A stretch of DNA of 64,000 nt, from the NCBI GenBank assembly GCA_047495785.1, contig JBLDXI010000021.1, positions 806,001 to 870,000 of the forward strand, read 5' to 3'. Positions 37,054 to 41,700 of the stretch are shown here, one piece after another. A model generated the notes under the pieces. That model did no database searches. It was not told where the DNA came from and worked only from the letters and a program-made list of their open reading frames with translations. The position numbers and the translations under genes were made by a program. This stretch comes from Lepidodermella squamata (Eukaryota; Animalia; Gastrotricha). Position 1 is the first letter of the stretch. Every line of letters begins with the position of its first letter.

Positions 37054-37891
37054 TTTATCACAATTTCCTATAAAATTCTGATCATATTTTCAATTCAAAC
37101 ATTATTTCAGACCATTGCATTTTCTCGTCTCTCTTGAGCTAAACCATTAAAAAAATTCATTTCAAACCCTAGTCCACCTGAATTTTACGCTGACAATGCA
37201 ATTTGTAGTTCCATTTCACTACAGCAATGCATTCACGCACGAAAAGGTACAAGAGTTTATATTAAACCGCCGAGAGTGAGGTTAAATTTCTCATCAGCCA
37301 ATGAAAGCTACACTTGAATTGACGGCGCAGTCGTTTGCTGGAGTATAAATAATCTCATAATAGATCTAAAACAGACACATCATTAATGGTTAATTCAAAA
37401 TTCTCAACAAATTATAATGGCTTTCTATGATATACGTGACATTTTAGGGCGCGTTATAATAAAATACCAGGTTTGTACAAAAGTGTTTGTCGAGTTTTAA
37501 AGCAGTTCAGCGACATATCACTACTCCACATACCACACAACGATTGATAGAGACTAACTACCGTGAGTGGATGACCGGAAAAAATCGTCATTTTGCGTTA
37601 ATACTGCTTTCATACAACTAAGTTATTACTGAACGTGAACTAAAAGCAGGTAGCATTGTCTGACGACGAACATAACACGTAGAACTCTTTTCAAAGTGGA
37701 AATTCGGCAATTAATGGAGCGCGAAAAAAGTGATCGATTGCAATTGATTCACAACAATCAAATTATTGTGTAAAGGGAGGATCACCTGCGCGACTAGCGC
37801 AAAGTTTCATTGTTTTATTTGAGTTATTCTTTATTTCAAATGGGGCCAATCGATCCGTATTGCGTAATGGCTCGATCTGCTTCGTTGAAAT

Positions 37892-39350
37892 CTACTTTGG
37901 TGATCCAGATGAGATTGCGTATTTTCGTTTTCCATTTTCATTCAGAACGGCGATGTGCTGTAAATAAAAGCCAATATTTTTTAGTCAAACATTGAATTAC
38001 TTCAAATTACAACCAGTTAATCGATTTTCACTAATAATGGAACTTACGCCCAGGTCACGGAAATATTCGTTGTAATCGAGTGCGTAACCAACAACAAACG
38101 CATCGGGAACGGAGAAAGCGATATCTGATCGCCAGTTATTGATTGTAGGAAACAGGGGAAGAGGGAGAAAATTTGATATTATTAATATTGCAATGCGAGA
38201 GTGTATTGATACACGCACGCATGTCTTATATTGCAACACATCAAATACAAAAGAAGCGTTGCAAATTATTTTTGGGACGATTAGGGTGGAATGCAGTCAA
38301 AAAGTGCAATTTTTAGAAACGTTCAACCGAAAACCTACCCGCATATCGCGGAAGAATTCATTGTAATCAATCGCGTAGCCTATGATCCATTCATTAGGCA
38401 CTTCAAATCCGAGGACTAGAGAGAGATAAATAATGAAAATCGAGGATTTAATTTTTATAGCAATAACAAATTCGCGGCAAATATTTCATCGCTTCTCAAG
38501 TTAACAAGACATGCGTGCGATTAGAAAATTAGTAAAACTTACAATCAGGACGATAACCGGAACTATTCGGAGTTCGCTTCAGCAGCAGTCTGTAACCGAA
38601 ATACGTCGGTAGAGAAATCTTGGATGATATTAAAGCTTACGTGGCAACTTTCACGCATCTTGGTTTGTAAGTCCCAAGAAGTTCCAAAAGCTTTTCCATA
38701 GTTCGACCAGTGTCTGTTAGACAGTTACATTAGATGAAATGGATACTTCTAAATTTCCATCGTACCGATAATATCTTCAACAACCAAGACATTCTGTAGT
38801 TAAACAACTTTGTTACATCTGAGTAATTATAAAGCAGCCTCAAACCTTGCCCTTCAAACTGCGAAGCTCATCAGCACCAATTATTTCCATAGTTTTCGAT
38901 TCCTCGTTCTTAAAACAAATTCAACAGAACATTAAACGTTTAAATAATCCATACTACTTACCACATATGACTTCATCCGAATGAAGTCTATGGAAATCGG
39001 GAAGCAAATGCCTGAACCCTGGCAAACGTCGCGAATTTTATCGAGCAGATCGGAGAAAAACTTGTAGCCGCCCTTTAAGACACAAAGTACTGAGAGAGGC
39101 TGGCTACCGAACTCTTGTACGATGTCTCGAGCGAGACGTTCAATTCTGTCACCAACAAGGCCATGAGGAACCATTATGTATTTGATATCATCTTCGTAAT
39201 GCTTTGGAACGCTAAGACAATCGACGGGGTACCCAGGAAAATCATCAGGAATCTGTAAATCATCTGTAATGAACCAGGAATTCACAATCCAGCGAAACAA
39301 CTTACCACTACACAATTGTTATACACTGACTTTTGGCCGTTTTGCGACAT
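37892..39350 (-). CDS. HPRT1: Hypoxanthine-guanine phosphoribosyltransferase, copy B, with two alternative 77-nt exons (38415-38339 and 38124-38048)
   Basis: [44 protein letters not shown] and [13 protein letters not shown] motifs assembled across GT-AG introns. Confidence 0.92.
38214..38519. promoter_or_regulatory. Intronic complementary elements (candidate splicing docking/selector pair) flanking HPRT exon 7a
   Basis: cgcacgcatgtctt (38214-38227) is the exact reverse complement of aagacatgcgtgcg (38506-38519); a second nested pair agaagcg (~38252) / cgcttct (~38490) is also present. Confidence 0.7.
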
Positions 39351-39558
39351 TTTTGAATTGACAACTATTAAATATATTAATTATTTCTATAAATGACATC
39401 AAATTTTAAGAAGAATGACAATAACAATTATTGGATAAATAAATGCTGAGGTTGAAATCACGAAGTTAAATACAAATTTAGCATCATGTCACTCTAAGAG
39501 CAAGCTTTCTGAGTCCAATCTCGGAAGACCGCTGAAAGTAATTGGCGTACATTGCGTT

Positions 39559-40706
39559 TCAGTCGTCGGCTGAAGAGGACGTTATTGCGTATTTTTGCTT
39601 GCCATTTTCGCTCAAAACTCCAATATGCTTGGATCGAAACGAATAAAATAAATGGCGGGAAATTGAAAGACTAGAATACCCTCATATCCCTAAACACTTC
39701 GTTGTAGTCAAATGCATCTCCGGATATCCATACATTGGGAATTTCAAAGCCCAGAACTAATAAGCAAAGTTAATTATGAACTGAATCAGGCTAGAATACT
39801 CACAATCGGGCCGAAATCCCGAGCTAAGAGGATTACGCTTCAGGAGCAATCTAAAAGTAACGCGTGCTCTCGTCAATAATAGAAAGGATGGTCATTTGTC
39901 TCACGAGGCAACTTTGACGGAACGAGGATGATGTTCATTCAGAAGTTCAACCAGTTTATCCATGGTTTTTCCTAAAATTTGCAATTGAAACCTCAACTAT
40001 AAATATGCTAGAGCTCAGACCGGAATCAATAACATCTTCCACAACCAGGACATTCTAAAGATATCAACAACTTGAATTTACCAGAAAAAACTCGTGTCAA
40101 AAAATACCTTGTCTTTCACGTACTTCAGCGACTCAGCGCCAATAACTTCCATTGACTTGGACTCATTGTTCTAAATTAAATTCAGTGATTTCTCGTGTGC
40201 TCATTCCAAGGTACGAACCACGTAAGATTTCATGCGGATGAACTCGATACTCAGCGTTGGTCTAATGCCTTTAGCAGCACATAGATCTCTAACATTTGTA
40301 ATAAGGTCCGTGAAGAACTTGTAGGCTCCCCGCAGGACGCAGAGAAGAGTTAATGGTTCGGTTCCGTAGTGCTCAACAACATCATGAGCCATGCATAAAA
40401 TACGATCTTGAGCAAGTCCATAGGGAATGAGAATTCTATCAAAATCTTCTCTGTAATGCTTAGGAACGAATAATGAATTGACAGGATAGCCGGGATCGTT
40501 GTCATTGATCTAAACACGTAATTTACTCGGAAGGTGAGCATTCGAGAGCGAGAAACTGTACCTACCACAATGTAATTACTGGGGCCACAAGAGTTATCCA
40601 TTTTGTCCACAAGATCGCAGTGACCACTATTCCCAACACAACTTTGCTCCGAGCGACTATCAGAGAATGTCAAACTAATAAATATTAATATAAAAAATGT
40701 TTTCAT
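39559..40706 (-). CDS. HPRT-family paralog, copy A, multi-exon (start at 40706 or 40601)
   Basis: [33 protein letters not shown] and FEIPNVWISGDAFDYNEVFRDMR motifs; exon layout nearly the same as copy B. Confidence 0.88.
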
Positions 40707-41700
40707 GAGTATTCTATTAGCGGGCGTTTCTAGCTACCCCACTTCTCCAATATGAAATTCAGCCTAAGAATATATTCCTAGAGTTAGTAATCATAAAATA
40801 CATAATCAAACATCTGTGGTATTCAGCAATGACGAAGTATGAGTGGTGCAGTTTGCAGTGCTCATTCAAGGCTTGATTTTTGGAGCAGTAACAAGCAACG
40901 TTAACATAATACTATCGAAATTAATACTTGAGAAGGTACGAGTAACTAGGCCAAGAAACATAAGCGTTGATAAATGATAAAGAAAAAAGAACTACGCAAT
41001 CCCACTACGTCACTTGGTTCGAAGTCGACATTCAACATTCAACCATCACGATCGACCGCCCTTCACCGCGAGGAGCGCATGGCCGCCTTTTCCGCCCTCT
41101 TGCTCGAAAATGCAATACGCGCGCTTTTTCATTTGTTTGTCTCGTTAATTAAATAAAATTGATATACTTTGTATAAAAATGATATTATTAGTCGATCTGA
41201 TCGTGTGTGCAATTTGTTTGGCGGTAATTTTTTCAGGCGCGCGTGGTTTCGGCCTTACGCTTGTTCGCGTCCTTCGCTTCCCCCTCGGGTAATGCTGGTT
41301 GCAAGAAGCCCTTCTTGGCTTTGGATCAAGGGTTTTTGATCTTCGGTAACGCCTTTCATCGTTTTAATTGTTTCTCATGGTCTTTAACGCGGGATTTCGT
41401 CCCTAATTATTGCCCGGTGCACACGGGACATGGGGAAGTTGGCTGTAAGAGCGTCCCAAGACGCGGATCTTGGAAACTGTTCAGCATTCATCCGTGAAAA
41501 GTCATCCCTTCAAATGTTTCACCCATGCCGCTTTCTATTGTTGAAGTAATCTTGAGCTTTTAGTGGCGGCGCAACAAATTGCTGACTTACGATTTTCTCA
41601 TCCAGAATCCAGAGCCTCCTCATGTTGGCCATCGAAAATGCATATCACTGATTGTTTATATTTAGATAGTCATGAATCTTCCCTAACACAATATTTGCGC

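What the first reader, a model, noticed from the sequence alone, without database searches (positions are those of the whole stretch)
38048..38542. HPRT with mutually exclusive purine-pocket exons and an RNA base-pairing switch
Seen: HPRT copy B has two homologous exons of exactly 77 nt with good splice sites and the same phases. Exon 7a (38415-38339) encodes [26 protein letters not shown] and exon 7b (38124-38048) encodes [26 protein letters not shown]. Including both or neither shifts the frame. A perfect 14-bp inverted repeat pairs a site ~22 nt after the exon-6 donor (38506-38519) with one between 7a and 7b (38214-38227), and a nested 7-bp pair extends the stem. Known: this segment holds the purine-stacking aromatic and base-recognising residues (human F186/V187/D193), Trp occupies that position in Toxoplasma HGXPRT, and competing intronic pairings govern mutually exclusive exons in Dscam1 and 14-3-3zeta. 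Inference: splicing swaps the purine-recognition loop of a salvage enzyme, and the stem hides 7a to select 7b. I know of no such description for an animal HPRT.
Basis: partly seen in the sequence, partly recalled or inferred. Interest (0 to 1): 0.92.

Follow-up and report, generated by a model that had tools for sequence, protein, structure and literature searches.

The report
HPRT gene swaps its purine-binding loop
One of two neighbouring purine-salvage (HPRT) genes in this small invertebrate makes two enzyme versions by splicing in one or the other of two alternative exons for the loop that holds the purine base, and a strong RNA stem in the introns probably helps pick the second exon.

Summary
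HPRT copy B (minus strand, 39350-37892) has two homologous 77-nt exons, 7a and 7b, with the same phase and intact GT/AG sites. Using both or neither shifts the frame.

Spliced contigs of a public run (X1) carry both the 6-7a-8 and the 6-7b-8 joints, at depths 122.5 and 309.2. These add up to the depth of the constitutive joints (about 428), so each mRNA carries one exon or the other. A second, shallow run shows only 7b.

Both exons are old and constrained: synonymous sites are saturated, while non-synonymous difference is 0.15-0.25.

By alignment to human HGPRT, the exon encodes loop IV. Residue 186, which stacks on the purine, is Phe in 7b and Trp in 7a.

The 14-bp inverted repeat is exact and occurs nowhere else in the 121-Mb genome. 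No shuffle out of 5000 reaches it. It extends to 16 bp (-27.8 kcal/mol) and has pairing probability near 1.

Whether the stem steers exon choice, and whether the two isoforms differ in substrate use, remains inference. No related species was within reach, so covariation could not be tested.

I found no paper or annotated isoform showing this switch in another animal HPRT. The scan has noted many other mutually exclusive exon sets in this genome, but none in HPRT.

The parts
37892..39350 (-). HPRT copy B coding region. Exons (high to low): 39350-39306, 39252-38962, 38908-38846, 38793-38766, 38713-38641, 38589-38543, then 7a or 7b, then 37957-37892 (stop).
   Evidence: Translation of the spliced exons gives two intact 229-aa HPRTs. 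Every intron is confirmed by a spliced joint with GT..AG ends in X1, and most also in X3. Exon 2 hits Pfam PF00156 and is 54-59% identical to annotated animal HGPRTs.
38543..38589 (-). Constitutive exon 6 (47 nt), donor ATT|gtaagt.
   Evidence: It is joined to both 7a and 7b.
38339..38415 (-). Exon 7a (77 nt), the Trp-type loop IV. It is the proximal exon, has the strongest polypyrimidine tract of the gene, and was the minor form (about 28%) in run X1.
   Evidence: Joints 38415>38543 and 37957>38339 at depth 122.5. Aligns to human HGPRT residues 178-201 with W at position 186 and I at 187. Acceptor composition.
38048..38124 (-). Exon 7b (77 nt), the canonical Phe-type loop IV. It is the distal exon and the major form in X1 (about 72%). 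It is the only form assembled in X3.
   Evidence: Joints 38124>38543 and 37957>38048 at depth 309.2 in X1 and 11.7 in X3. Aligns to human HGPRT residues 178-201 (the printed alignments show the same stretch in shorter chains), where 21 of 24 residues are identical to the human sequence.
38504..38519 (-). Docking-like arm in intron 6, starting 23 nt after the exon 6 donor.
38214..38229 (-). Selector-like arm in the 7a-7b intron, 90-105 nt before exon 7b. It pairs with the docking arm (14 perfect bp, plus one G-U and one A-U).
   Evidence: Duplex of 16 bp at -27.8 kcal/mol. Pair probabilities 0.83-1.0 in the exon 6 to exon 8 ensemble. Present in the MFE and centroid folds. Forcing the docking arm unpaired costs 14 kcal/mol.
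37892..37957 (-). Constitutive last coding exon 8.
39559..40601 (-). HPRT copy A, the tandem paralogue upstream. It has the same intron positions, a single loop-IV exon (39756-39680) of the Trp type, and short introns (47-56 nt) with no stem.
   Evidence: A and B are the only two HPRT genes in the genome. A's exon 7 is closer to B7a (53/77 nt) than to B7b (41/77).

Best explanation
HPRT copy B is a functional, expressed purine-salvage gene whose loop IV is encoded by two ancient, mutually exclusive 77-nt exons. Loop IV stacks on the purine base and hydrogen-bonds to it. Each mRNA carries 7b (canonical, Phe186/Val187) or 7a (Trp186/Ile187, like paralogue A), so the gene makes two enzymes that differ at 13 of 26 residues around the base pocket. 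This much is shown. The rest is inferred. A 16-bp stem forms between a site just after the exon 6 donor and a site upstream of 7b. It loops out 7a and brings the exon 6 donor next to the poorly marked 7b acceptor, which favours 7b. When the stem is open or absent, the proximal, pyrimidine-rich 7a acceptor wins. Splicing 6 to 7a removes the docking arm, so 7b loses its helper and the 7a donor goes on to exon 8. That would make the choice exclusive. The frameshift from double inclusion or double skipping is a second safeguard. My odds: mutually exclusive use is real, 0.93; the stem contributes to exon choice, about 0.6; the isoforms differ measurably in purine preference or kinetics, about 0.4.
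For: Gene structure and frames. RNA: X1 contigs carry joints 6-7a and 7a-8 (both at depth 122.5) and 6-7b and 7b-8 (both at 309.2). The sum, 431.7, matches the exon 5-6 joint (428.2) and the exon 8 contig (421.1). Equal depths and 30-nt flanks fit a clean two-path bubble. X3 has a single 848-nt contig reading 6-7b-8. The DNA run X2 has no joints. Constraint: synonymous difference is 0.87-0.97 (saturated), but non-synonymous difference is 0.15 (A7 vs B7a) and 0.25 (7a vs 7b). Loop IV identity: and PMC2228302. Stem: perfect 14-mer, unique in the genome; 0 of 5000 shuffles reach it; intron-intron duplex energy beats all 2000 shuffles; -27.8 kcal/mol; pairing probability about 1. The three introns around the exon pair are 127, 214 and 90 nt, against 51-53 nt for the other introns of copy B and 47-56 nt in copy A. 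The distal exon with the weaker acceptor (5/12 pyrimidines against 11/12 for 7a) is nevertheless the major form.
Against: There is no test of the stem's function: no orthologous locus could be found for conservation or covariation, and no mutational data exist. There is only one selector and no matching pairing for 7a, so this is not a full competing-selector system. A thermodynamic pairing probability near 1 would predict almost no 7a, yet 7a makes up about 28% of transcripts. Other factors (kinetics, proteins) must therefore act. Evidence for both isoforms comes from one run of assembled contigs, labelled as a different organism and only guessed to be RNA. Three joints were not displayed, so a rare 7a-7b joint cannot be excluded. 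The 7b acceptor lies within the range of constitutive acceptors in these genes. The functional difference between isoforms is untested.
Confidence: 0.6

Rival explanations
1. The exon pair is truly mutually exclusive, but the stem plays no part. Exon choice is set by splice-site strength and protein factors, and exclusivity comes from the frameshift alone. The inverted repeat is a chance or otherwise-used element.
For: An earlier follow-up in this genome found that docking-like motifs in another exon cluster were no better than shuffles (s1-401873). 7a is still used in about 28% of transcripts despite a stem predicted to form nearly always. There is only one selector, and conservation could not be tested.
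Against: A perfect 14-mer pair, unique in 121 Mb, placed exactly where a looping-out stem would need to be, was reached by 0 of 5000 shuffles. The flanking introns are 2-4 times longer than all the others. The weaker, distal exon predominates. The stop codon after double inclusion lies in the last exon, so frame-based quality control may be weak.
Confidence: 0.3
2. Exon 7a is a decaying or noise exon: a relic duplicate that is occasionally spliced in and produces no useful enzyme.
For: It is the minor form and was not assembled in run X3. Trp at position 186 was seen in none of 142 other HPRT-family hits (mostly animal) examined.
Against: The frame is open and the splice sites are intact. It has the best polypyrimidine tract of the gene. 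It makes up about 28% of transcripts in X1. Non-synonymous difference from copy A's exon is only 0.15 although synonymous sites are saturated. D193, G189, Y190 and the YNE..FRD motif are kept. Paralogue A uses the same Trp type as its only loop IV and is expressed.
Confidence: 0.05
3. The inverted repeats are the terminal repeats of a mobile element that carried exon 7a into intron 6.
For: The two arms bracket exon 7a (38214-38519).
Against: The 14-mer and the 418-nt bracketing stretch (intron 6, exon 7a and the 7a-7b intron) have no other copy in the genome. No target-site duplication flanks the arms. The duplication is old, with synonymous sites saturated, whereas the repeat is perfect. That pattern points to selection on the pairing rather than to a relic.
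Confidence: 0.02

Closest known systems
Mammalian ATE1 exons 7a/7b (competing intronic RNA structures R1-R5; PMC7797038)
   Same: Both are enzyme genes with two homologous mutually exclusive exons. In both, an intronic element upstream of the first exon pairs with one lying between the two exons, looping out the first exon.
   Different: ATE1 has a second, competing pairing (R3 with R4) that loops out the other exon, plus an ultra-long-range stem, and its elements are conserved and tested by mutation. Here only one strong stem was found and nothing has been tested. I compared only the abstract-level description.
Drosophila Dscam1 exon 6 and 14-3-3zeta docking-site/selector systems (PMC3535345, PMC4691838)
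   Same: A docking site sits in the intron next to the constitutive exon and is complementary to a sequence upstream of a variable exon. The pairing brings the chosen exon close and loops out those in between.
   Different: Those clusters have one selector per variant competing for a single docking site, and a repressor that keeps unpaired exons silent. Here there are two exons and one selector, with the proximal exon as the apparent default. The host is an unidentified non-arthropod-like invertebrate.
Metabolic enzymes switched by mutually exclusive exons, such as pyruvate kinase PKM exons 9/10 and ketohexokinase exons 3A/3C (recalled, not checked here)
   Same: One gene yields two enzymes that differ in a ligand-contacting segment.
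   Different: Different enzymes and a different regulatory logic (protein factors). No such switch was found for HPRT in papers, in 142 homologues, in annotated isoform pairs of four molluscs and a sea star, or in metagenomic HPRT loci.
Canonical animal HGPRT (human HPRT1; PDB 1BZY and related entries)
   Same: The 7b isoform keeps F186, V187, D193 and the whole [18 protein letters not shown] stretch. The 47-nt plus 77-nt exon pair has the same sizes I recall for human exons 7 and 8.
   Different: There is a second, Trp-type version of the same exon in the same gene, and a tandem paralogue that has only the Trp type.

Membership tests
Hypoxanthine-guanine phosphoribosyltransferase (6-oxopurine PRT) | Phosphoribosyltransferase fold and sequence similarity to known HGPRTs | tested here: met
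   Exon 2 alone hits PF00156 at 26.0 bits, just under the 26.3 cut-off set for whole proteins. It is 54-59% identical to annotated animal HGPRTs. Exons 7a and 7b hit solved HGPRT structures at E = 1e-7 to 2e-9.
Hypoxanthine-guanine phosphoribosyltransferase (6-oxopurine PRT) | PRPP-binding motif ([11 protein letters not shown]), the Lys165 equivalent (LLLKRT), and loop IV with an aromatic residue and Asp193 | tested here: met
   All are present in both B isoforms by alignment. Assignment of roles follows PMC2228302.
Hypoxanthine-guanine phosphoribosyltransferase (6-oxopurine PRT) | Catalytic activity on hypoxanthine and guanine | not testable with these tools
   This needs an enzyme assay of both isoforms.
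Mutually exclusive exon pair | Tandem homologous exons of equal length and phase with their own splice sites | tested here: met
   77 nt each, 45/77 nt and 13/26 aa identical, ag|..|gt on both.
Mutually exclusive exon pair | Mature RNAs contain one exon or the other | tested here: met
   Both 6-7a-8 and 6-7b-8 joints are in X1 contigs, and their depths sum to the constitutive depth.
Mutually exclusive exon pair | Never both and never neither | tested here: inconclusive
   There is no 7a-7b or 6-8 joint among the 15 joints listed, and the depth arithmetic leaves little room for one. However, 3 joints were not displayed and contigs drop rare forms.
Docking-site/selector RNA pairing that controls mutually exclusive splicing | Intronic complementarity between a site next to the constitutive exon and a site next to a variable exon, beyond chance | tested here: met
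Docking-site/selector RNA pairing that controls mutually exclusive splicing | One selector per variable exon, all competing for the same docking site | tested here: not met
   Only one selector was found, upstream of 7b. There is no comparable complement for 7a or downstream of 7b. The system resembles a single looping-out stem rather than a full competing set.
Docking-site/selector RNA pairing that controls mutually exclusive splicing | Conservation or covariation of the pairing across species | not testable with these tools
   No protein or locus more than 59% identical to exon 2 was found in any collection.
Docking-site/selector RNA pairing that controls mutually exclusive splicing | Disruptive and compensatory mutations change and then restore exon choice | not testable with these tools
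   This needs a minigene or genome-editing experiment.

The most novel reading that the evidence does not exclude
An RNA-structure-gated exon switch retunes the base specificity of a purine-salvage enzyme. The Phe-type isoform would act as a standard hypoxanthine/guanine enzyme, and the Trp-type isoform would have a shifted preference (for example towards xanthine or another 6-oxopurine), or a different partnership with the Trp-type paralogue A. The 7a:7b ratio would be regulated by opening or closing the 16-bp stem. That would be the first splicing-controlled substrate switch in HPRT, and a docking/selector-like mechanism outside arthropods and vertebrates.
Probability: 0.25. Interest if true: 0.8.

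Novelty: new member of a known kind. Interest (0 to 1): 0.62.

Why it matters
HPRT is a textbook enzyme and a drug target in parasites, and its loop IV decides which purine is bound. A natural pair of isoforms that differ only in that loop is a ready-made experiment on purine recognition. The stem is short, strong and unambiguous, and it sits in a compact gene with introns of 90-214 nt. That makes a small, tractable model for RNA-structure control of mutually exclusive splicing in a lineage where none has been described. The tandem paralogue, which has only the Trp-type exon, also offers a way to study how exon duplication and gene duplication share out function.

Tried and rejected
1. Conservation of the exon pair and stem. 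No relative above 59% identity turned up in four searches: the representative search, the word-indexed protein searches with exon 2, the same with a mixed alignment, and the metagenome scan. The organism's own protein is not in those collections.

2. I could not submit the spliced 229-aa isoforms to the structure, atlas or exact-lookup tools. So there are no 3-D models of the two isoforms.

3. A second alignment meant to bias the search towards the Trp type (A2) misaligned the short exon pieces and was not used.

4. Transposon origin of the inverted repeat is rejected.

5. No third cassette exon exists in or around the gene.

6. Rfam finds no known RNA in the introns.

7. A second pairing links 38443-38426, just before the 7a acceptor, with 38038-38021, just after the 7b donor. 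It is 13 bp at -15.3 kcal/mol. It is AU-rich and not significant: 38 of 300 shuffles score as well. It would also form a pseudoknot with the main stem. I do not claim it.

8. No residual homology remains between the introns upstream of 7a and 7b. A duplication origin for the two arms therefore cannot be shown.

9. The statement that Toxoplasma has Trp at this position could not be verified in the paper library.

Full report
**What is at the locus**

The minus strand between 40601 and 37892 carries two tandem HPRT genes. Copy A runs from 40601 to 39559. Copy B runs from 39350 to 37892. A six-frame search of the whole 121-Mb assembly with exon 2 finds only these two HPRT genes.

The two genes share most of their intron positions; only the exon 4/5 boundary is shifted. 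Copy B has one extra exon. After the 47-nt exon 6 (38589-38543) come exon 7a (38415-38339) and exon 7b (38124-38048). Both are 77 nt, both start with two bases that complete a codon, and both have an ag acceptor and a gt donor.

Splicing 1-6, 7a, 8 or 1-6, 7b, 8 gives intact proteins of 229 aa. Using both exons, or neither, shifts the frame and ends at a stop inside exon 8. A relaxed peptide search of 6.5 kb around the genes finds no third copy of this exon apart from copy A's own exon 7.

**RNA evidence**

Three public runs hold this stretch. I laid all three on 37300-41300 in the single call allowed.

- X2 covers everything evenly and shows no joints, so it is genomic DNA.
- X1 and X3 show joints with GT..AG ends at the introns of both genes, so they are derived from RNA. 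X1 shows 15 such joints, and one more intron (copy B, between exons 2 and 3) may be among the three joints not displayed. X1 is only guessed to be RNA in its record and carries a different organism label, but 44 of its 49 contigs are at least 99% identical to the window.

In X1 the joints 6-7b (38124>38543) and 7b-8 (37957>38048) both have depth 309.2. The joints 6-7a (38415>38543) and 7a-8 (37957>38339) both have depth 122.5. The sum, 431.7, equals the depth of the 5-6 joint (428.2) and of the exon 8 contig (421.1).

Equal depths, one contig per joint, and flanks of 29-30 nt are what a clean two-path bubble in a 31-mer assembly graph looks like. I read this as one exon or the other in essentially every transcript, with about 28% 7a in that sample.

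X3 is a small run and has one 848-nt contig reading 5-6-7b-8. It has no 7a contig, which is unsurprising at depth 11.7.

There are caveats. These are contigs, not reads. Contig depth is a poor measure of expression. Three joints were not displayed, so a rare 7a-7b form cannot be ruled out.

**Are both exons functional?**

Nei-Gojobori counts show saturated synonymous sites in every comparison, with pS between 0.87 and 0.97. Non-synonymous differences are low: 0.15 between copy A's exon 7 and B7a, and 0.25 between B7a and B7b.

Both the exon duplication and the gene duplication are therefore old, and all three exons have stayed under purifying selection. B7a is closer to copy A's exon (53/77 nt, 19/26 aa) than to B7b (45/77 nt, 13/26 aa).

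Two histories fit. Either the exon pair predates the gene duplication and copy A later lost the Phe-type exon, or an old transfer moved the Trp-type exon between the paralogues. I cannot tell which.

**What the exon encodes**

Both exon peptides align without gaps to residues 178-201 of human HGPRT (1BZY and related chains).

- In 7b, the residues at human positions 186, 187 and 193 are F, V and D. The stretch from P183 to L201 is identical to the human sequence except for K185A.
- In 7a they are W, I and D. Further changes are D184N, K185E, V188I, L192I, Y197F and L201M.
- Copy A also has W and I, plus V188S, Y190D and L192F.

The Leishmania HGPRT structure paper (PMC2228302) states that loop IV binds the base by stacking of the Phe equivalent to human F186. 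It also lists hydrogen bonds from the backbone of V187 and D193 to O6, N1 and N2. The swap therefore replaces the part of the enzyme that touches the purine.

Among 142 homologues (mostly animal HPRT or PRTFDC1) recovered here whose loop IV could be read, 141 have Phe at this position, one has His and none has Trp. I recall that Toxoplasma and some bacterial 6-oxopurine enzymes use Trp there, but I could not verify this in the paper library. What the swap does to specificity or kinetics is unknown.

**The stem**

The 14-mer at 38519-38506 lies in intron 6, with 23 nt between it and the donor. It is the exact reverse complement of 38227-38214, which lies in the 7a-7b intron 90-103 nt before exon 7b.

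- The 14-mer occurs only at these two places in the window and in the whole genome, with control counts of 0.
- The 418-nt stretch from the exon 6 donor to the 7b acceptor (intron 6, exon 7a and the 7a-7b intron) has no other copy in the genome. The repeat is therefore not a transposon end.
- In 5000 dinucleotide-preserving shuffles of the two introns, the longest perfect complement reached 13 bp five times and never reached 14.
- The intron-intron duplex energy beats all 2000 shuffles.
- With one G-U and one A-U pair added, the helix is 16 bp at -27.8 kcal/mol.
- It appears in the minimum-energy and centroid folds.
- Its pair probabilities are 0.83-1.0 across the exon 6 to exon 8 pre-mRNA.
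- Forbidding it costs 14 kcal/mol.

The three introns around the exon pair are 127, 214 and 90 nt. The other introns of copy B are 51-53 nt and those of copy A are 47-56 nt.

**How it most likely works**

Shown: two isoforms are made, and a strong, unique stem brackets 7a.

Inferred: when the stem forms, 7a sits in a 276-nt loop. The exon 6 donor is then brought to within about 23 + 88 nt of the 7b acceptor. That acceptor has few pyrimidines in its last 12 positions (5/12, against 11/12 for 7a), although this is within the range of constitutive acceptors here.

This would explain why the distal, less well marked exon is the major form. If 6-7a splicing happens first, the docking arm leaves with the lariat. 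7b then loses its helper, and the 7a donor proceeds to the exon 8 acceptor. A single stem could in this way make the choice exclusive. The frameshift is a further safeguard, but the resulting stop is in the last exon, so decay of such mRNAs is not assured.

One point counts against a simple thermodynamic switch. The stem is predicted to form almost always, yet 28% of transcripts carry 7a. Timing during transcription, or proteins and helicases, must therefore matter.

**Comparison with known systems**

The layout is that of the docking-site/selector systems of Dscam1 exon 6 and 14-3-3zeta. It is closest to the R1-R3 pairing of mammalian ATE1 exons 7a/7b (PMC7797038, PMC4691838, PMC3535345).

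It fails one defining feature of the full system: there is no second selector competing for the docking site. Conservation and mutational proof could not be tested.

I therefore file it as a mutually exclusive exon pair with a single looping-out stem. It works like those systems, but membership is not established.

**Novelty**

A full-text search found no paper on mutually exclusive exons in HPRT. The 36 hits use HPRT as a reference gene or concern other genes.

Annotated isoform pairs of Babylonia, Littorina, Pomacea, Ostrea and Asterias share an identical loop IV. Of 35 metagenomic HPRT loci, the 27 in which the loop-IV region was found each show a single Phe-type copy; three of these have an intron after that exon.

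The scan's notes list many other candidate mutually exclusive exon sets in this genome, but none in HPRT. One earlier follow-up found that docking-like motifs in another gene were no better than chance. The present stem is of a different order of significance.

**Limits**

- The organism could not be identified. Its HPRT is at most 59% identical (exon 2) to anything in the collections, and the best-named hits are molluscs, a shrimp and spiders.
- Spliced isoforms could not be handed to the structure tools.

Noticed in passing
window 39559-40601 (-): The tandem paralogue HPRT copy A is expressed (joints at depth about 110-200 in X1). It has only the Trp-type loop IV and carries unusual changes at otherwise conserved sites: VLRGAYKF instead of VLKGGYKF, and V188S, Y190D and L192F in loop IV. 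It may be a specialised or regulatory paralogue.
   Followed up: partly
window 38504-38519 and 38214-38229 (-): The two arms of the stem lie at almost the same distance upstream of their exons: 91-104 nt before 7a and 90-103 nt before 7b. This could be a trace of the original tandem duplication unit or a spacing constraint. The flanking introns show no residual homology.
   Followed up: partly
window 38426-38443 and 38021-38038 (-): A second, AU-rich complementarity of 13 contiguous pairs (-15.3 kcal/mol) links the region just before the 7a acceptor to the region just after the 7b donor. It is not significant against shuffles and would form a pseudoknot with the main stem.
   Followed up: yes
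window 37376-37891 (-): RNA contigs continue about 450-515 nt past the copy B stop codon at the same depth as the coding exons (the X3 contig reaches 37376; X1 depth is 300-620). AATAAA-like signals lie at about 37835. This is either a long 3' UTR or a co-transcribed downstream unit.
   Followed up: no
window 38891-38950 and 39016-39091: The DNA run X2 shows two haplotypes with dense differences (6 in 60 nt and 4 in 76 nt) in intron 2 and exon 2 of copy B. Both exon 2 haplotypes are also present in the RNA-derived run X1 at roughly equal depth.
   Followed up: no
window 38543-38589 and 38339-38415 (-): The 47-nt and 77-nt exon sizes match what I recall for human HPRT1 exons 7 and 8. If so, these intron positions would be conserved between this invertebrate and vertebrates. 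This is recalled, not checked here.
   Followed up: no
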